From: Ostrea edulis
Lineage: Eukaryota
Direction of reading: 5' to 3'
NCBI RefSeq assembly: GCF_947568905.1
Contig: NC_079169.1
Coordinates: 52,762,001 to 52,826,000, forward strand
Length of the DNA stretch: 64,000 bases
Below, piece after piece: positions 9,801 to 41,250 of the stretch (positions are counted from its first letter, which is position 1; each line of letters begins with the position of its first letter). Made by a program: the position numbers and the translations under genes. The notes beneath the pieces were generated by a model. That model was not told the origin of the DNA and searched no databases. It saw only the letters and a list, made by a program, of their open reading frames with translations.

Positions 9801-12800
9801 TTACTTCCTGAAGAAGTGACCCCAAGGATTGTAATTGTCAGGATGACCATCCCTTTGTCCAAAGTGTCCACTATCGCCATGCCCATGCTCTGAGTTATGA
9901 CCATGCCCGGTGTGTTCATGATAAGTATGATGACCATACCCATATCCTCCATGGTCAAATATATGATGACCAAACTCTACATGAAGGGGGATGTTTTTGT
10001 GATGTGGTCCGTATCCTTGCTCGTAATTATAGACACACTTCACGGGACATTTGACGCCTTTGAACTCCTGATATTTGTACGTAACATGACAGTGCTGTGG
10101 ATGCTTGCACTTGGGTTTGGGAGGACACTTGCATTTGATTCTGCAGGATAACGCACAGTGGAGACCATTAATGGTTTTGTGCATGAGAACTTTCTGGCAG
10201 ATTCCAGGGTATCCCTTGTAAATGGGGATTTTCGGACATTTTGGCAATTTTGGACAGTTGCATTTGACCTTACAGTTAATGGGACAGATACGACCATTTA
10301 TGTTCTTAAAGACAAAATTGTATTGACACAAACTTTTGTACCCAGGAGTTTTTGGTAAGTCCGGACATTTTGGTAAAGTGGGACAGAAGCATCCAATATT
10401 GCACTTTACAGGGCATCTGATGCCGTGTATATATTTATAGTGGTAGTCATAGGTACAGATATTCTTATACTTGGGGTAGGTTTTCATGGGTGGACATTTT
10501 GGTTTGGGGGGACAATGGCAAATCCTGTCGCACTTGTAAGCACAATTCCTACCCCCGATGGTTTTATACCTATATACATATTTACACAAGCGCCTGTTGG
10601 CCTTTCCAATTTTAGGGCATTTTGGGAATGGCGGGCAAGTGCATTTTACATCACATTTGACTGCACACTCTTTGTCGTGAATCTTTTTATATGTATATTT
10701 ATATCGACAGAAGTCTTCAAGACCTTTATACTTTTGAAGTGAGGGGCATTTGGGGAAATTTGGACATCCGCATTCAGCTTCGCATTTAATGGGACAGAGG
10801 ACCCCTTGGATATTCTGGTATTCGTACTTAGGACTGCAAGTCTCTTTGTTTTGCTCCAATATTTTTGGACATGTAGGAGCAGGAGGACAGTAACAGTCTA
10901 CATTGCATCTTACAGGACAAAGTTGACCGTACACCTTCGCGAAAACATAGGTAGGGTGACATTGCTTTGCGATTGTGGAATTTGTAGGGAGTGGTGGACA
11001 TTTTGGAACAGGTGGACAGCGGCATGTGACGTTACAGCTCACTGCACAGGTCAGACCATTGATCTTTTCGTACTTGTAGACGGGTTGACACAATCCCTGA
11101 CCGAGTGGCGGACATCGTGGCATGGGAGGACAGCTACAGGTCGTGGAACACTTAACGGGGCACTTCTTCTTCCCAATCATCTTGTAGGTAATCTGGTTTA
11201 CACACAGATTCCCGTACTTTGGATTCTGCTTAATGACGGGACATTTGGGATGTTTTGGACACAAACATATCAGTTTATACCTTACAGCACAAAGCAGGTG
11301 ATTGATGTTGTCATATATATATCTGAGATGACAATTTTTGGGAATTACTTTTGGAAGTTTGGGTAAAGGTGGACAGTGGCAATCGATGGAACAATTGACT
11401 GCACATCGTTTTTTGTTAAACGCTTTGTATTGAACGTTGTGACGGCATAAATTCTTGTAGACTTTATGTTCTGGAAGTGGTGGACACTTCGGAAGTGGCG
11501 GACAACGACATTCCAATACACACTTAATGGGACAACTGAGACCTTGGTCTGGCTTGGAAAAGACGTACCTTGTTCTGCACAGGTGGTTTGAGTCCTCTTC
11601 GATTTGGGGACACTTGGGGAAAGGATTACAGCGACAAGTATTTGTACAGTTAACAGCGCACGTCAGACCATTGATTTCCTGATAACTATAGACCGGGGAA
11701 CAGACACCATATTTAGGTTTCTTTAATGGAGGACAATTGGGAAGTGGGGGACATTGACATTTAATAGTGCATTTCACTGGGCAAGGGATTCCGTTTATTT
11801 TTGTACTTATAAAGATTCTTTGACAAAATTTCTTATATTTTCCATATTTAGTTAAAGATGGGCATTTCGGAATAGGTGGGCATTCGCATTTGTTTTCACA
11901 TTTAACGGGGCACTTGTTTCCTTGTATTGTTTTGTAAGTATAATTAGGTTTACAGAATTTGGCGTATCGACCCTCGACTGGTTTGCATATTGGGGCTGGG
12001 GGACATCTACAGACCAACTGACATTTTATGGCACAAGTTTTGCCCTGAATTTCTTTATACGTGTACAGAGGTTTACAAAGTTTGGCCTTCTCTGGTTTCT
12101 GGGGTGGGCATTTTGGAAGTGGCGGGCACCTACATCTCAGCCGACACCTTACAGGGCATCTTAAACCATCGATGTGCGTATACGCATAAACGGGAGAGCA
12201 CAGGTTTTCTTCCCCTTTGGGCGACTTTGGACATTTAGGAGCAGGAGAGCAGCCACATTGAATTTTACATTTGACAGGACATCGTATACCGAACCTCTTC
12301 TGGTATTCATACACAGGACGACATAACCTTTCTTTTGAAATAGGAGGGCATTGCGGCGGTGGGGGACAAAAGCATTTAGAAGTACATTTGACCGGACACT
12401 TTTTGCCATTGATCTTCTTGTATTGGTAAGTTCTCTGACAGTGTCGTCCCTTGTGTTTAGTTATACATGAGGGGCGTGGTGGACAAACACATACCGTTTT
12501 ACATTTGATAGCGCAATTCTTCTTATTTATCTTTTTGTAGATGTATTTTTCGTAACACAGCTGACCGAATCCTTTCGTTTGCGGCGGTGTGGTACACTTC
12601 GGAAGTGGGGGACAGTGGCAGTCCAACACACATTTGACCGGGCACCGGTGACCTTTGATCGTGGTGTAGATATACCGTGGATGACACAACTTCCCGTGCG
12701 CTCCACTTGCAACCGGACATTTTGGAACAGGAGGAAAGGAGCACCTGTACTTACAGCGGACAGGACAAAGTTTTGCACCGACCTTCGTGAAGTGGTAGGA

Positions 12801-25000: not shown

Positions 25001-26773
25001 TTTCCTGAAAAAGAATTCTAGACTATTTAATTTCTAATATGAAAATCATGAAAGTGACAGCTGTTTTATACGTTTGAGAGAAATTGTAACTGAAATTCCC
25101 TTTCAGAAATGTGATAGAAAGCTCCAAGTGTTATTAATCACACGGTTGTTCAAATCCTAAGTGGATGAGATATGCTGAAGACATTACCATATATAATGAA
25201 TATTCCAATATAATTCTAATCTATGATTTTGACCCACCTGGACAACAGACTCCCACAGCCCCGGTGGTTGTACACTTATAACCATATGGACAGGAGTAGG
25301 CTTTGGAACACTTGAAAAGTCCGCCACTTCTGGTCACATAAGGGGTACTTACTTTACAGGGGTTCTGAGCTATTCAAAACACAAAAGTGCTTCAGTTTCA
25401 ATACACAGAGAAGAATGGCTGGTGTGGAAAAACACACCAATTCTAAACAGATGTATAATATACATTATTTTATGAAAATGAAGTCTTTTTCGGGCTCGAG
25501 CAATTAAAGGCCTTGTTTCTGAATTGGAAGACAACACCATGACATCTTGTAATGCTTCTTTTGAATCAGTGTTCATGAAAGCATCAATATCAATGTAAAT
25601 ATTTCTTCGACACGACCTCCCACGAAAACAACGACATCAATGTATAATATTCGGTTACCACAAGACGATACACCCAAGATACCCCCGACAATGGATTGTT
25701 GTTACATACCAGCACAGCAGATTCCCTTGCTACACACAAATCCATCAGGACAACCGTTCCTGTTTCTACACCGCACGGTCAGTCCGTAGCGGTCAGTCAG
25801 GGCGCCATATTTACACGCATTCCGGGATTCTGAAATAGACAATAGTTACATCTGAGATATAGTTAGGACAGTCAGAGCGCCATATTTACACGCATACCGG
25901 GATTCTGAAATAGACAATAGTTACATCTGAGATATAGTTAGGACAGTCAGGGCGCCATATTTACACGCATTCCGGGATTCTGAAATAGACAATAGTTACA
26001 TCTGAGATATAGTTAGGACAGTCAGAGCGCCATATTTACACGCATACCGGGATTCTGAAATAGACAATAGTTACATCTGAGATATAGTTAGGACAGTCAG
26101 GGCGCCATATTTACACGCATACCGGGATTCTGAAAAAGACAATAGTTATATCTGAGATATAGTTGGGACTATCAGAGCGCCATATTTACACATAATGAAA
26201 TTCCGAAATAGAGGAGGTTTAGTTCAGACTGTCAAAGCGTCATGTTTACACACATACCGGGATTCTGAAATAGACAATAGTTAAATCTTGTTTCCAAGGA
26301 TGCTGTTTTTAAAAATTAATTTCATTTTATTTGTTGTTTTGTCTTTTTTCGAAATGTCACAAGTTATGACTGGACTAAATTCTATGTATTTGATAGAAAC
26401 ATACTAATAAACGACAAATAAATATTTTTGTACCACTATGTCGAGAAAATTTTGACAAAGTTTAAGCTAAAATCTATGCACGAAGAATTAGGATGCAGGA
26501 TACCGGTAAATCTGTACTTATTCTGTTTAAATATTCTATATTTTATGTACGAATTAATAGGATACCGGTAAATCTGTATTTATCCTGTTTAAATGATCTA
26601 TATTTCAGCAGAAATGTCCACTTCTGCTGAAGATTGTATAGTCTAAAAAAAAAAACCATTGACGAAGTACTCATGGGAATATACAACGCTCAGTAACCTA
26701 ACAACACATCACCAATTTTACCTGCCACTCCCACAAAGACTGCCAGGGCGAGGATAGCTCCCAGGGTCCTCAT
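22027..26773 (-). CDS. Secreted Cys/Pro/Lys/Tyr-rich repeat protein B (about 1093 aa), tandem paralogue of A
   Basis: Exons (minus) 26773-26722 (MRTLGAILALAVFVGVA), 25829-25710 (RNACKYGALTDRYG..CRNRNGCPDGFVCSKGICC), 25369-25238 (NPCKVSTP..CSKAYSCPYGYKC..GVCCP) and 25004-22027 (24 repeats). All introns are phase 1, matching the architecture of A. Confidence 0.9.
25794..26283. repeat. 75-bp minisatellite, about 7 copies, containing the acceptor and first 36 nt of gene B exon 2
   Basis: CAGTCAG recurs at 25794, 25869, 25944, 26019, 26094, with degenerate copies at 26169 and 26229. Confidence 0.95.
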
Positions 26774-37138: not shown

Positions 37139-39111
37139 ATGGCTTTACTCGCTACATTGGTCACTATTTTGTTCGTTAGCTCTTCTGTGAACGGTACGTA
37201 ATGCACTAAAAATTGTTCTTGAAAAAAAAAAAGAATGAACGGAAGAAGAAAAAAAAAATCAGCAAGATTTGCAAACTTTATATGAATCATTTTGTTTTTC
37301 TGTGTAATATTAAGCACACAAATTGAAAGACTTTGCTTTTCTTACCTGAATTTTAAATAGCGATTTCATATTAATAAAAAGAAAACCAAAATATCCAAAT
37401 TCAATATATTTATACCATTGCAATTTCAGGTCAGAACCAGTTTTTCCCGTGGATTTGGAGAGCATTCCCTACATGTCCTCATTTACCGTGCGAACCAATT
37501 CCTTTAAATGTTGCGGAATATTGCATTGTTCCAGGGCATCTCATGTTCCCGGGCTGGTCGATCTGTAGAAGTTGTGACGTTGTAAACCCAGAATGCTTAT
37601 CTGTAAATGAAAACCTACTTTTAACACCAACCAGCAACACACCTCCAATAGGTGGAGCACCTGTCGTGGGATCCGGGATCTCCGCACAAAAACCGGGAGT
37701 ACTTCCATGTTTGCATGTCTCGTGTTCATCTTTCAAGTCTCTGAACAGCTCATGCAAGAAAGAGGGACCAGTTATTGAATTCAATGGGGCTCAATGTAGA
37801 GACTGTGATACCATCGATCCTTTCTGCGAAGGCTTGAACCTGGACATTTGTCAGAACCACATTGTGGACTGCACGGGGGTCCCTAAGTCGACACCAAAAC
37901 AATGTATTGACCAGAGTGTCATTCAGTACAACAACCAACCTTGCTTGTCGTGTCCATTCCTAAAAACGTCAGAACCAGGGTGTGACGCAGCGGAATTCAG
38001 GCGGTGTCCCGGGCTACCCTGCTCAGATACGTCCAAAATACCAAAATCATGTCTTAAGGAAGGCCGGATGGTTATTCTTGGTTCATCTCAATGCCAGCTC
38101 TGTCCGGAAGTAGATCAATTCTGTCCGGATCTGAACTTGAATGTCTGTCCTCATCAGTCTTCCGGGTGTGTTAACCTTGATGCGAGAACTCCCAAGGAAT
38201 GCATTGATCAAGAAGTAATTGTGTACGAGAACAACCATTGTCTGACCTGTCCTAAGCTTAAACCCTCCGCCACCTGTAGACAATACATTCCTACAGGTGG
38301 TCAACAAGTCCAGCTCTGTCCAGAATCTTTCTGCCCACCGCTTACTGGAATCCCTCAGAATTGCATTACACAAGGAGAAATGTCCAGTGTTGAAGGCGTA
38401 CCTTGCAGGAAGTGTCCGGTGATCGATCCATTCTGTCCTGGTCTTAATCTACAAATCTGCCGGAATCATATCCTAGATTGCTGGGGAGCTCCAAGAAACG
38501 CCCCAAATAGGTGCAAGTCTCAATCGGTCATTTCCTTTGAAAATAGTGCATGTCTAACGTGTCCCTACTTCAAAACCGAGGAATCGGGATGTATAGAGGA
38601 AACCTACAACATGTGCCCAGGAATCCAATGTCCTGAGGTAAAAGGGGTACCCTACCGCTGTTTACGGGAGAAGAGGCCCGTGGGAACACAGTGCTCAACA
38701 GAATGTCCGTCCAAACTTGCGATTCCCGGATGTCCAATGGCGCCAAGGCCGCCGCAACTTCCATCCGCAACATCTGCTCCAGAAACACCAAGGCCACCCT
38801 TCAACCCACAGCTCTGTCCAGCTCTTATGTGTCCGGACCTTCCCATTGGTACACGCCAATCCTGTCTAAGGCCCGGTGTAATTGCCGGTCTGAACGGTCA
38901 GGAATGTCCAGGATGCCCACAGATTGACCCTGCCTGCCAACAAGAAAAGCAAATACAGATCTGTGAAAATCTCCGCCCCACATGCAGACCGATTCCACGG
39001 GGATTTCCCGCCAGGTGTTACGAACAAGCAACCACCTCTTACAATGGACAAAGGTGTTTGACGTGTCCAGATATTCTACCCTTCTGTCTGAGGTCGAATC
39101 CCTTGAACTAA
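37139..39111 (+). CDS. Secreted protein C (578 aa) with 10 six-Cys modules and Pro-rich linkers
   Basis: Exon 1 37139-37193 (MALLATLVTILFVSSSVN, donor G|GTACGT) joins by a phase-1 intron to exon 2 37430-39111, which extends the 522-aa ORF upstream. AATAAA at 39321. Confidence 0.9.
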
Positions 39112-40624
39112 ACTTGTGATTGTGCTGGCACTTCACTATCTTGAGAAATCCAATGCTTGTGTATATATTTCTGTAGTTGGTTCATCCTTGCATCTTTCAT
39201 TGTATATTACAAATCATAAACTTACATTTCATTTTTATTTTGTGGTAAATTTTGTAGTATTTATTTACATGTTTATCTTACATATACAATATGATTTTTT
39301 GTGATATAGAAAATGAAACAAATAAAACAATGAAATCTTAGACAGCATATTTTCATTTGTACAAAAAGACCACCTGAAATAAAGGGAGGAATCAATTTCT
39401 TAAACTTCAAACTCAAGGCAATAAAGTTATCAACTTAGTTGTCGACGACAATGTTGACCAGACAAAGATTATGCTATATCTAGATAAAAGGTGAATAATC
39501 AGGAAACTTTTCGAAACGCCAAGGAACACATGTAGACCCGGCTACCTAGCATGGCTACATCAACAAACGAAATCATTTGAAGCTGGGAGTTTTCGGGTCG
39601 TATGGGGCTTTAATGAATATTTGAAGGTATGTTTGGACACAAGTATAGTAGGAAAATGTGTTAAGAATGTTATTATATTAAATTTATGAGACAGTAACAC
39701 AAAAATACAACGATATCAGGCCTCAACCGTGCGCAGCTTTTTGTGCGCCGTAAATCGAAGGTTTTTATAAGGGGGTGAATCTGTAGCTCTTTGTTCCATC
39801 AAAAAAAAAATTCAGAGAGCTACAGTTCTTCAGCTAAGTTTACGGGGGCTCAACGTTCATGGGTTGCCACGATTTTACAGTTTTGTTGGAAAGTAATTTC
39901 ATTGATATGGTTTTTCTGCATTACAACATAAATTGGAACGTGCATCTCGTGTTTTGAAATCCAATTGAGAAGGGGGGGGGGGTTACCCACGAAAATTGAG
40001 TCCCCATGAAATCTACTTATTCCACTGTATATAGAAAGCTTGTACTTGAGGCTTGAGCCAACGAAATGTGTATAACTTTAATTATATTAAACCAACAGCA
40101 CACAGAAGCTGCACTAATTCCAATTCATACCTCTGGGTCATTCACAAAATTTGTTTATGACAGAGATTATGTGTGAAATATTTTATTGACGAGCACAAAT
40201 AAAACATGACCCCTGTAAAACCTCTACATACCTGACCGATGCCGTGGAACCCTCCAGCTACTATTCATCATCAACTTGTTTTCTACTGTCGCAGATTAAA
40301 TCTATTCTGCATAACTTATTGTACAACATTACTCGTGATATAATTAATAACAGCTGTCTCTACAGTTTTGCAGTACATGTGGATTGAAAACAAGGTAAAA
40401 AAAACAAAAAACCCAGCCCTATTACCGTCCTTCCTTAAGCTTTCTATTACTCATGTATACACATATTTCTTGCGGTGTTTGTATTGACAGTGTTATTCCC
40501 TGTATATAGGCAACATTAACTAATAATCAAACAAATAATGTGCACAAAGGTTTGTTTATCAAGTCACGTGCAGTCTACATTGACCACATTGTTTATAGTT
40601 TCGAAATACATACACATGTATACG

Positions 40625-41250
40625 TTGTATCAATCCGTAAATATAAAACATACGTGTGTTGTATCAATAAATATAAAATACACGTGTGTTGTATCAATCA
40701 GTAAATATATAAAACACACGTGTGTTGTATCAGTAAATATAAAACATACGTGTGTTGTATCAATAAATATAAAATACACGTGTGTTGTATCAATCAGTAA
40801 ATATATAAAACACACGTGTGTTGTATCAGTAAATATAAAACATACGTGTGTTGTATCAATAAATATAAAATACACGTGTGTTGTATCAATCAGTAAATAT
40901 ATAAAACACACGTGTGTTGTATCAGTAAATATAAAACATACGTGTGTTGTATCAATAAATATAAAATACACGTGTGTTGTATCAATCAGTAAATATATAA
41001 AACACACGTGTGTTGTATCAGTAAATATAAAACATGTGTGTTGTATCAGTAATATAAAACACACGTGTGTTGTATCATTAAATATAAAACACTCGTGTGT
41101 TGTATCAATCAGTATATATAAAACACATGTGTTGTATCAGTAAATATAAAACACACGTGTGTTGTATCAGTAAATATAAAGCACACGTGTGTTGTATCAG
41201 TAAATATAAAGCACGCATGTGTTGTATCAATCAGTAAATATAAAACATGA
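40625..41250. repeat. 30-34-bp minisatellite with a 96-bp higher-order trimer
   Basis: Units of 30+34+32 nt repeated 4 times from 40637, then degenerate monomers. Confidence 0.9.

What the first reader, a model, noticed from the sequence alone, without database searches (positions are those of the whole stretch)
9801..26773. Tandem pair of giant secreted proteins: Lustrin-type domains fused to 24 copies of an unrecognised six-cysteine module
Seen: both genes have a signal exon, two Lustrin-like exons and one about 3-kb exon with 24 units of C-P-P-x-P-x-C-(x6-14)-C-x3-Y-x-Y-K-x-I-x-G-x2-C-[PA]-V-x-C-x3-C-x. Consecutive units are joined by one residue (C-x-C), and the proteins are strongly basic and Tyr-rich. 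Known: Lustrin-type Cys-rich domains were named from abalone nacre Lustrin A, and Lys/Tyr/Cys-rich secreted proteins are typical of molluscan adhesive and periostracal matrices. Inference: I do not recognise the repeat as a described family (not Kazal, antistasin, EGF, TIL or WAP). It could form a disulfide-stapled rod or spring in shell organic matrix, periostracum, ligament or cement.
Basis: partly seen in the sequence, partly recalled or inferred. Interest (0 to 1): 0.82.

Follow-up and report, generated by a model that had tools for sequence, protein, structure and literature searches.

The report
Oyster giant six-cysteine repeat proteins
Two neighbouring flat-oyster genes each encode a very basic protein (secretion signal clear in one) made of 24 copies of a small six-cysteine module that matches no described protein family or solved fold; they are real and conserved, but what material they build has not been tested.

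Summary
Two minus-strand genes carry single exons of 3.0-3.2 kb (open frames 9804-13004 and 22030-25017). Each exon encodes 24 tandem units of 35-44 aa with the spacing C-x5-C-x5..13-C-x13-C-x3-C-x3-C-x.

Gene B has a clear signal exon and two Lustrin-type exons. In gene A only the second Lustrin exon is recognisable, and the signal exon is only a candidate.

The genome is most likely Ostrea edulis. A spliced contig from another oyster run joins the gene B exons exactly at the predicted junctions. It shows strong purifying selection (pN 0.11, pS 0.75).

The unit matches nothing:
- Pfam gives only sub-threshold TIL noise.
- PDB sequences give no match.
- A profile scan of 1.84 billion proteins finds only oyster relatives.
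- Confident AlphaFold models (pLDDT 92 for three units, 85 for one) find no fold match.

Each unit is predicted as a proline-rich strand followed by a long beta-hairpin. Natural cysteine losses suggest 1-4, 2-5, 3-6 disulfides.

Only four genes in this genome carry the module. I found no paper describing it.

The most likely role is a secreted, cross-linkable structural rod of an extracellular matrix.

The parts
26722..26773 (-). Gene B exon 1: start codon and signal peptide (MRTLGAILALAVFVGVA), ending in phase 1 before a GTAAAA donor
   Evidence: Read directly from the sequence. An upstream ATG is closed by a stop after 3 codons.
25710..25829 (-). Gene B exon 2: first Lustrin-type six-Cys domain, phase 1-1
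   Evidence: Pfam Lustrin_cystein E 7.9e-5, 23.3 bits, below the 27-bit cut-off. Splice sites. The junction with exon 3 is reproduced in the spliced contig L015.
25238..25369 (-). Gene B exon 3: second Lustrin-type domain, phase 1-1
   Evidence: Pfam Lustrin_cystein 31.2 bits, above the 27-bit cut-off, E 2.8e-7. Both junctions match L015 in length and register.
22027..25004 (-). Gene B exon 4: 24 six-Cys units, then HGYKK and the stop codon
   Evidence: The exact 984-aa ORF is present on 18 public genomic contigs.
14138..14198 (-). Gene A candidate exon 1 (MRINILHICIWICYYSKWKT, phase-1 GTAATT donor). Weak signal-peptide candidate, not established.
   Evidence: Scan for ATG plus a hydrophobic stretch plus a donor site. 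It has the same 'MR' start and the same phase as gene B exon 1, and the exon lengths sum in frame. There is no transcript support.
13864..13989 (-). Gene A exon 2: degenerate relic of the first Lustrin-type domain (4 of 6 Cys kept)
   Evidence: No Lustrin_cystein hit. Only DUF7107 at E 0.014. Splice sites and phase.
13184..13321 (-). Gene A exon 3: Lustrin-type domain
   Evidence: Pfam Lustrin_cystein 32 bits, E 1.5e-7. Splice sites.
9801..12973 (-). Gene A exon 4: 24 six-Cys units, then a 74-aa His/Gly/Tyr-rich tail (His 23%, Gly 20%) and the stop codon

Best explanation
These are two old paralogous genes of an oyster-restricted family. The genome is most likely Ostrea edulis. Each encodes a long, very basic protein of about 1100 aa. 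Gene B carries a clear secretion signal; gene A has only a candidate one. The order of parts is: signal peptide, one or two Lustrin-type cysteine domains, then 24 head-to-tail copies of a previously undescribed six-cysteine module.

Shown: each module is predicted with high confidence to be a proline-rich N-terminal strand (CPPxPxCP), a variable loop, and a 10-11-residue beta-hairpin that carries the conserved YxYKxIxG motif.

Inferred from natural cysteine losses: the three disulfides are intra-unit and pair 1-4, 2-5 and 3-6. They staple the proline strand and the first hairpin strand onto the second strand.

Inferred from geometry: because units are joined by one residue, the array should form a stiff beaded rod several tens of nanometres long. 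The Tyr/Lys/Pro-rich variable loops would stick out at each joint.

Inferred function: a structural component of an extracellular organic matrix (periostracum, ligament, cement or shell framework). It would bind anionic partners through its charge of about +140. It would be cross-linked through tyrosine (possibly DOPA), lysine and cysteine chemistry. In gene A the histidine-rich tail could add metal or pH-dependent interactions.
For: Gene reality and structure.
- Open frames of 1067 and 996 codons.
- Phase-1 introns with canonical splice sites, and exon lengths that sum in frame.
- Contig L015, from another oyster run, joins exons 2-3-4 of the gene B orthologue exactly as predicted.

Constraint.
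- Gene B against L015: 80.5% amino-acid identity, pN 0.108, pS 0.753, 76 of 77 Cys kept.
- Gene A against gene B: 55.6% amino-acid identity, third-codon-position identity 36%, 140 of 143 Cys columns kept.
- 19 of 24 units are positional best matches between the two genes, so the 24-unit array predates the duplication.

Secretion. Gene B has a signal peptide. The small paralogues P0002, P0006 and P0007 also carry N-terminal signal-like peptides.

Fold. The three-unit AlphaFold model has pLDDT 91.8 and the single unit 84.7. Both place strands at residues 20-29 and 32-42.

Disulfide inference.
- Unit 3 lacks C1 in A, B and L015, and L015 has also lost C4 (codon TAC).
- Unit 14 of gene A lost C2 and C5 together.

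Composition. pI 9.4 and net charge +138 to +148. Loop Tyr is 16.7% in B. The tail of A is 23% His and 20% Gly.

Against processing. No dibasic processing site at any of the 47 unit ends examined.
Against: There is no expression, tissue or proteomic evidence for this species.

Gene A's signal exon is not established.

The disulfide map and the rod geometry are inferred.

The unpaired Cys of unit 3 is not conserved in L015, so a conserved cross-linking thiol is doubtful.

A basic, Tyr/Lys/Cys-rich composition suggests a structural or adhesive role but does not prove one. No tyrosinase, peroxidase or other matrix gene was seen next to the genes.
Confidence: 0.45

Rival explanations
1. A multivalent binding or defence protein. 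On this reading it is a secreted polycationic array of beta-hairpins that coats, agglutinates or kills microbes. It could instead organise mucus or chitin through its repeated Tyr-bearing hairpin faces. It would not be a load-bearing matrix protein.
For: Most units carry a net charge of +3 to +11 and are predicted as disulfide-stabilised beta-hairpins. The only, very weak, Foldseek neighbours include the hairpin peptide arenicin (E about 4-5). Oysters hold many lineage-restricted secreted cysteine-rich defence families (earlier notes of this scan, unchecked).
Against: There are no dibasic or other regular cleavage sites at any of the 47 unit ends examined, and the linker is a single residue between two cysteines, so release of peptides is unlikely. 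Evolution is slow and purifying (pN/pS about 0.14), unlike many immune effectors. The fold matches are not significant.
Confidence: 0.2
2. A multi-headed protease inhibitor, in which each six-Cys unit is an inhibitor head, as in multi-Kazal or multi-TIL proteins.
For: Small disulfide-rich tandem units are typical of inhibitors. There are weak TIL hits in 5 of 39 three-unit pieces, best E 0.0056. From general knowledge, not tested here, Lustrin-type domains often accompany Kunitz or WAP domains in other animals.
Against: The TIL scores are far below the 24.5-bit cut-off, and TIL has 10 Cys where these units have 6. There was no Kazal, Kunitz, WAP, antistasin or pacifastin hit. The only exposed loop varies freely in length (5-13 residues) and in sequence, and shows no conserved reactive-site motif. 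No inhibitor structure appeared in the fold searches.
Confidence: 0.1
3. A reproductive or egg-envelope protein: a long tandem-repeat coat component of eggs, or of brooded larvae in this brooding oyster.
For: Giant tandem-repeat secreted proteins occur in mollusc egg coats (general knowledge). The family is lineage-restricted.
Against: Strong purifying selection and strict conservation of unit number and order are not the usual signature of gamete-recognition proteins. There are no ZP, lectin or other egg-coat domains.
Confidence: 0.1
4. Non-functional or unexpressed DNA in this species: relic genes that merely remain open.
For: No transcript evidence was obtained for this species. Gene A has a degenerate first Lustrin exon, an uncertain signal exon and four missing cysteines.
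Against: Open frames of about 3 kb are kept although synonymous sites are saturated between the paralogues and against the orthologue. Nearly all cysteines are conserved, and the splice sites and phases are intact. The orthologue is transcribed and spliced in another oyster.
Confidence: 0.05

Closest known systems
Lustrin A (abalone nacre matrix protein) and the Pfam family Lustrin_cystein (PF14625)
   Same: One exon of each gene passes the Lustrin_cystein threshold (31-32 bits). Like Lustrin A these are modular, cysteine- and proline-rich proteins of a mollusc with a secretion signal (clear in gene B only).
   Different: There are only one or two such domains, at the N-terminus. No WAP-like end or other Lustrin A part was detected by Pfam. 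About 90% of the protein is a different module.
Mussel foot protein 2 (mfp-2), a byssal plaque protein made of tandem EGF-like six-Cys repeats (from memory and as cited in PMC6337334)
   Same: It is a tandem array of roughly 40-aa six-cysteine units in a basic, Tyr- and Lys-rich secreted bivalve protein, so it is the nearest functional analogy.
   Different: The cysteine spacing is not that of EGF. No EGF model matched any of the 39 three-unit pieces at E up to 10. The predicted fold is a single long hairpin plus a proline strand.
TIL (trypsin-inhibitor-like) cysteine-rich domain, PF01826
   Same: It is the only Pfam family hit more than twice: 5 of 39 pieces, best E 0.0056.
   Different: The scores are far below the gathering cut-off (about 10 bits in the tabulated piece, against 24.5). 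TIL has ten cysteines. No TIL structure appeared in the fold searches.
'Late cornified envelope-like proline-rich protein 1', the automatic NCBI name of the small four-unit paralogue in Saccostrea echinata (XP_061163825)
   Same: That oyster protein really does carry four copies of the same module. The name reflects its Cys/Pro richness.
   Different: The name is an automatic label taken from a mammalian skin protein. The oyster proteins have a signal peptide and an ordered six-Cys module. No homology to the mammalian family was shown here.
His/Gly-rich ends of byssal collagens and His-rich jaw and beak proteins (from memory)
   Same: Gene A ends in a 74-aa tail with 23% His, 20% Gly and 8% Tyr. 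That composition is used elsewhere for metal- or pH-dependent cross-linking.
   Different: This is a resemblance in composition only. Gene B has no such tail. Nothing was tested.

Membership tests
Lustrin_cystein domain (PF14625) | Score above Pfam's gathering cut-off (27 bits) | tested here: met
   Gene A exon 3 scores 32 bits and gene B exon 3 scores 31.2 bits. Gene B exon 2 is below the cut-off at 23.3 bits, and gene A exon 2 is not hit.
Lustrin A-type protein (orthologue of abalone Lustrin A) | Many alternating Cys-rich and Pro-rich domains, plus a Gly/Ser-rich region and a WAP-like C-terminus | tested here: not met
   There are only 1-2 Lustrin domains. No WAP or other Pfam hit was found in the large exons.
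EGF-like repeat proteins (for example mfp-2) | Match to an EGF model and the EGF cysteine spacing | tested here: not met
   No EGF family was listed at E up to 10 for 39 three-unit pieces. The spacing is C-x5-C-x5..13-C-x13-C-x3-C-x3-C.
TIL domain (PF01826) | Ten cysteines and a score of at least 24.5 bits | tested here: not met
   The units have six cysteines. The best E-value is 0.0056, the tabulated piece scores about 10 bits, and only 5 of 39 pieces are hit.
Kazal, Kunitz, WAP, antistasin and pacifastin inhibitor domains | Match to the family model | tested here: not met
   None was listed by Pfam at E up to 10. No PDB sequence matched.
Any solved fold (PDB) or ESM Atlas cluster | A significant structural match to a confident model | tested here: not met
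   Three-unit model: best Foldseek E 0.98, best VIA Z 2.1, best Atlas TM 0.37. Single-unit model: best Foldseek E 2.9, best VIA Z 2.1. Small disulfide-rich domains are hard to match, so this does not prove the fold is new.
The oyster six-Cys module family defined here | CPPxPxC, then a loop, then C-x13-C-x3-C-x3-C with YxYxxIxG in the hairpin | tested here: met
   47 units of genes A and B align with the units of the small paralogues. Profile hits in this genome fall in only four genes. In public proteins they fall only on oyster sequences.
Secreted matrix or adhesive protein of a mollusc biomaterial | Expression in a secretory epithelium and presence in the material | not testable with these tools
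No proteome of this species could be searched.

The most novel reading that the evidence does not exclude
The module is a truly new protein fold family, so far seen only in oyster sequences: a proline strand stapled by three disulfides onto a long beta-hairpin. The 24-unit arrays would form stiff cationic rods several tens of nanometres long. These rods would be a main structural or adhesive element of an oyster material whose proteins are still poorly known, such as cement, ligament or periostracum.
Probability: 0.3. Interest if true: 0.7.

Novelty: new variant of a known kind. Interest (0 to 1): 0.5.

Why it matters
Molluscs build shells, ligaments, periostracum and cements from lineage-specific secreted proteins, and oyster adhesive and ligament proteins are still poorly catalogued. 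Here is a conserved, intact pair of giant genes built from a compact, confidently modelled disulfide module with no known relative. Such a module could serve as a defined building block for stiff protein rods. It gives proteomics searches of oyster materials concrete sequences to look for. If the proteins turn out to be matrix components, they add a new domain type to the biomineralisation and adhesion toolkit. If not, they still define a new oyster-restricted domain family of four genes.

Tried and rejected
Searches that found nothing useful.
- The word-index protein search with the whole gene B exon found nothing. With the first six units of gene A it found only P0001. The exact gene B ORF is in the collection but was not returned. 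Proteins of the window's own genome therefore seem to be withheld, so these blanks say nothing about whether this species' genes are annotated.
- The ESM Atlas feature search gave no usable hit.
- Paper searches for the run id, for the automatic protein name, and for oyster, lustrin, adhesive and periostracum terms found no description of this family.
- Tandem Repeats Finder finds no DNA-level repeat inside the big exons, so the units are old and diverged.

Ideas tested and rejected.
- I tested whether the neighbouring cysteine-rich ORF (37378-39108) carries a distant version of the same module. hhalign gave a probability of 2%, so this is rejected.
- I considered a polyprotein of hairpin peptides. 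It is rejected for lack of cleavage sites.
- I considered a metallothionein-like metal binder. It is rejected because of the signal peptide, the aromatic-rich ordered beta structure and the regular disulfide-type spacing.

Steps that could not be run.
- The first scan for a gene A signal exon in the same phase found no convincing candidate. A relaxed scan gave the weak candidate at 14198-14138.
I did not try further, and read laying was not used.
All searches were exon by exon.
Full report
WHAT IS THERE

The minus strand of the window holds two very long open frames, 9804-13004 (1067 codons) and 22030-25017 (996 codons). Next comes a 577-codon open frame of a third, unrelated cysteine-rich gene; no other ORF listed exceeds about 340 codons.

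Both products are 13-14% Cys, 13-14% Pro and 13% Lys. Tyr is 6.6% in gene A and 9.9% in gene B. The pI is about 9.4 and net charge is +138 to +148.

The cysteine spacing is almost perfectly periodic: C-x5-C-x(5-13)-C-x13-C-x3-C-x3-C, then one residue, then the next unit. Parsing by this pattern gives 24 units of 35-44 aa in each gene. The consensus is CPPxPKCP...LCxxxYxYKxIxGxxCPVKCxxxCx.

GENE MODELS

Gene B reads cleanly.
- Exon 1, 26773-26722, encodes MRTLGAILALAVFVGVA and ends before a GTAAAA donor.
- Exon 2 is 25829-25710.
- Exon 3 is 25369-25238.
- Exon 4 is 25004-22027.
- All introns are phase 1, all have AG/GT boundaries, and the exon lengths sum to 3282 nt, which is in frame.
- Pfam recognises exon 3 as Lustrin_cystein (31.2 bits against a cut-off of 27). 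Exon 2 is below threshold (23.3 bits, E 8e-5).

Gene A has the same layout for exons 2-4: 13989-13864, 13321-13184 and 12973-9801, again all phase 1.
- Exon 3 is a good Lustrin_cystein match (32 bits).
- Exon 2 has lost two of the six cysteines and is no longer recognised.
- A first scan found no convincing signal exon.
- A relaxed scan gave one candidate at 14198-14138 (MRINILHICIWICYYSKWKT). It has the same phase and the same 'MR' start as gene B, and it keeps the total in frame. I regard it as unproven.
- Gene A ends in a 74-aa tail with 23% His and 20% Gly, which gene B lacks.

WHOSE GENOME

The small paralogue on contig C2 is annotated in NCBI as an uncharacterised Ostrea edulis protein. 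It sits on a contig of 109,476,225 bases, which is exactly the length of C2 of this assembly. The window is therefore most likely European flat oyster, as earlier notes of this scan also say.

ARE THE GENES REAL AND USED?

Evidence from another species.
- The exhaustive profile search returned a 292-aa protein (P0001) from a public run, SRR13528984.
- Its 2015-nt contig (L015) is the gene B orthologue of a different oyster species, at 76-78% nucleotide identity.
- In it, Lustrin exon 2, Lustrin exon 3 and the repeat exon are joined without introns. The joins fall exactly at my predicted junctions, with the same length and register.
- This is transcript-type evidence for the model, but in another species.

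Selection.
- Over 528 aligned codons, amino-acid identity is 80.5%, with pN 0.108 and pS 0.753, which is near saturation. 76 of 77 Cys are kept.
- Genes A and B are 55.6% identical in protein, with third-position identity of 36%. 140 of 143 Cys columns are conserved.
- 19 of 24 units have their best match at the same ordinal position in the other gene.
- The 24-unit array is therefore older than the A/B duplication. That duplication is in turn older than the split from the L015 species, because L015 is far closer to B than to A.
- Tandem Repeats Finder sees no DNA-level repeat inside the exons, so there is no recent homogenisation.

Gaps in the evidence.
- The 18 public contigs that carry the exact gene B ORF are colinear with the genome, so they are DNA.

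IS THE MODULE KNOWN?

No test found a described family.
- Pfam found nothing in the whole exons.
- Scanning 39 three-unit pieces at E up to 10 gave only TIL in 5 pieces (best E 0.0056; about 10 bits in the tabulated piece, against a 24.5-bit cut-off) and scattered noise. There was no EGF, Kazal, Kunitz, WAP or antistasin hit.
- A profile of 47 units found nothing credible among PDB sequences.
- The same profile, run with HMMER against 1.84 billion representative proteins, gave five hits at E up to 0.001. Two are real: P0001 and a four-unit secreted protein of Saccostrea echinata. One (P0004) looks like a heavily altered copy of gene A/B units (perhaps from bisulfite-treated DNA), and two are low-complexity noise.
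- The Saccostrea protein is automatically named 'late cornified envelope-like proline-rich protein 1'.
- A word search with that protein found its O. edulis orthologue and two unnamed contig proteins.
- In this genome the module occurs in only four genes: A, B, a four-unit gene on C2 and a two-unit gene on C10. This held with both a narrow and a broadened profile.
- Paper searches found no description.

One caution applies. The word-index search did not return even the window's own ORF, although that ORF is in the collection. Blanks for this species' own annotation therefore mean nothing.

PREDICTED STRUCTURE

A three-unit segment (gene B units 19-21) was folded with an alignment of 39 three-unit windows. 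It gave pLDDT 91.8 and pTM 0.63. A single unit with 47 aligned units gave pLDDT 84.7.

Both models show the same picture. Residues 1-19 are non-regular: the proline-rich CPPxPxCP strand and the variable loop. Residues 20-29 and 32-42 form a long beta-hairpin whose turn is the conserved xG.

Neither model found a match.
- Three-unit model: best Foldseek E against PDB 0.98, best VIA-align Z against 48,161 chains 2.1, best ESM Atlas TM 0.37.
- Single-unit model: best Foldseek E 2.9, best VIA-align Z 2.1.

Small disulfide-rich modules are hard for these tools, so this shows 'no recognisable relative', not a proven new fold.

DISULFIDE MAP (INFERENCE)

I had no access to model coordinates, but natural losses are informative.
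- Unit 14 of gene A lost C2 and C5 together.
- Unit 3 lacks C1 in A, B and L015, and L015 has also lost C4 of that unit (codon TAC).
- The first and last units of gene B have all six cysteines.

This pattern fits intra-unit pairs 1-4 and 2-5, and by elimination 3-6. On that map the proline strand runs alongside the second hairpin strand, and C3 and C6 close the open end of the hairpin. The variable loop sits at the joint to the next unit, so units stack head to tail.

With hairpins of 10-11 residues, 24 units would span several tens of nanometres. The loops are where A and B differ most: loop Tyr is 16.7% in B and 6.5% in A, and loop Lys is 11% in B and 18.6% in A.

WHAT IT MOST LIKELY DOES

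The shown facts are these:
- a secretion signal in gene B;
- ordered disulfide-stapled units;
- extreme positive charge;
- exposed Tyr/Lys/Pro-rich loops;
- a His/Gly-rich tail in gene A;
- strong purifying selection on unit number, unit order and cysteines.

My best reading (confidence 0.45) is a secreted structural rod of an extracellular organic matrix. It would bind anionic partners and be cross-linked by tyrosine-, lysine-, cysteine- or histidine-based chemistry, in analogy to mussel foot protein 2. Which material it belongs to (periostracum, ligament, cement or shell framework) is open.

Rival explanations:
- a multivalent binding or defence protein (0.2);
- a multi-headed protease inhibitor (0.1), weakened by the failed family tests and the freely variable loop;
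- an egg or larval coat protein (0.1);
- unexpressed relics (0.05), made unlikely by the conservation.

A polyprotein that releases hairpin peptides is unlikely. None of the 47 unit ends examined has a dibasic site, and each linker is one residue between two cysteines.

VERDICT

The functional reading is plausible but untested.

I rate this a new variant of a known kind: a new domain family inside the familiar class of lineage-restricted, secreted, cysteine-rich repeat proteins of molluscs. Interest is 0.5.

Noticed in passing
window 37378-39108 (+): This is a third cysteine-rich open frame of 577 codons with 60 Cys arranged as ten six-Cys modules of two alternating types. Type one is C-x4-C-x9/10-C-x13-C-x2-C-x6-C and type two is C-x6-C-x10-C-x12-C-x2-C-x8/9-C. 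It has no Pfam match. Part of the spacing recalls the module of genes A and B, but profile-profile comparison gives no support for kinship (hhalign probability 2%).
   Followed up: partly
window 25794-26191 (intron 1 of gene B): A minisatellite of 75-bp units (5.3 copies, 95% alike). Each unit repeats the 3' end of intron 1 plus the first bases of Lustrin exon 2, so several copies of the splice acceptor are stacked upstream of the real one.
   Followed up: partly
L013 4628-5146 (-) = G000:C2:65382627-65383145; L014 5028-5456 (+) = G000:C10:32355027-32355455: Two small paralogues carry the same module. One has four units; it is annotated in O. edulis as uncharacterised, and its Saccostrea orthologue is named 'late cornified envelope-like proline-rich protein 1'. 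The other is a two-unit gene. In the four-unit protein the last unit lacks C2, and the preceding unit has an extra Cys directly after C6. This may be a compensating change.
   Followed up: partly
P0004 (public contig protein, 97 aa): This hit of the profile search looks like units 11-13 of gene A or B, but most prolines are replaced by Leu or Phe and there are other changes. One possible cause, not checked, is a contig assembled from bisulfite-treated DNA of a related oyster.
   Followed up: no
window 40520-41250: A tandem DNA repeat that reads as repeated 'NIKHTCVVS'-like peptides on the + strand and as 'DTTHVCFIF'-like peptides on the - strand. It looks like a satellite rather than a gene.
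   Followed up: no
L015 1-143 and around 1060: The spliced orthologue contig has an unexplained 5' part. No in-frame start codon lies upstream of Lustrin exon 2, and a signal-like peptide (MSFNCLTMLYFTILF...) sits in another frame. There is also a frameshift after unit 6. These could be assembly errors, a retained intron or a different first exon.
   Followed up: partly
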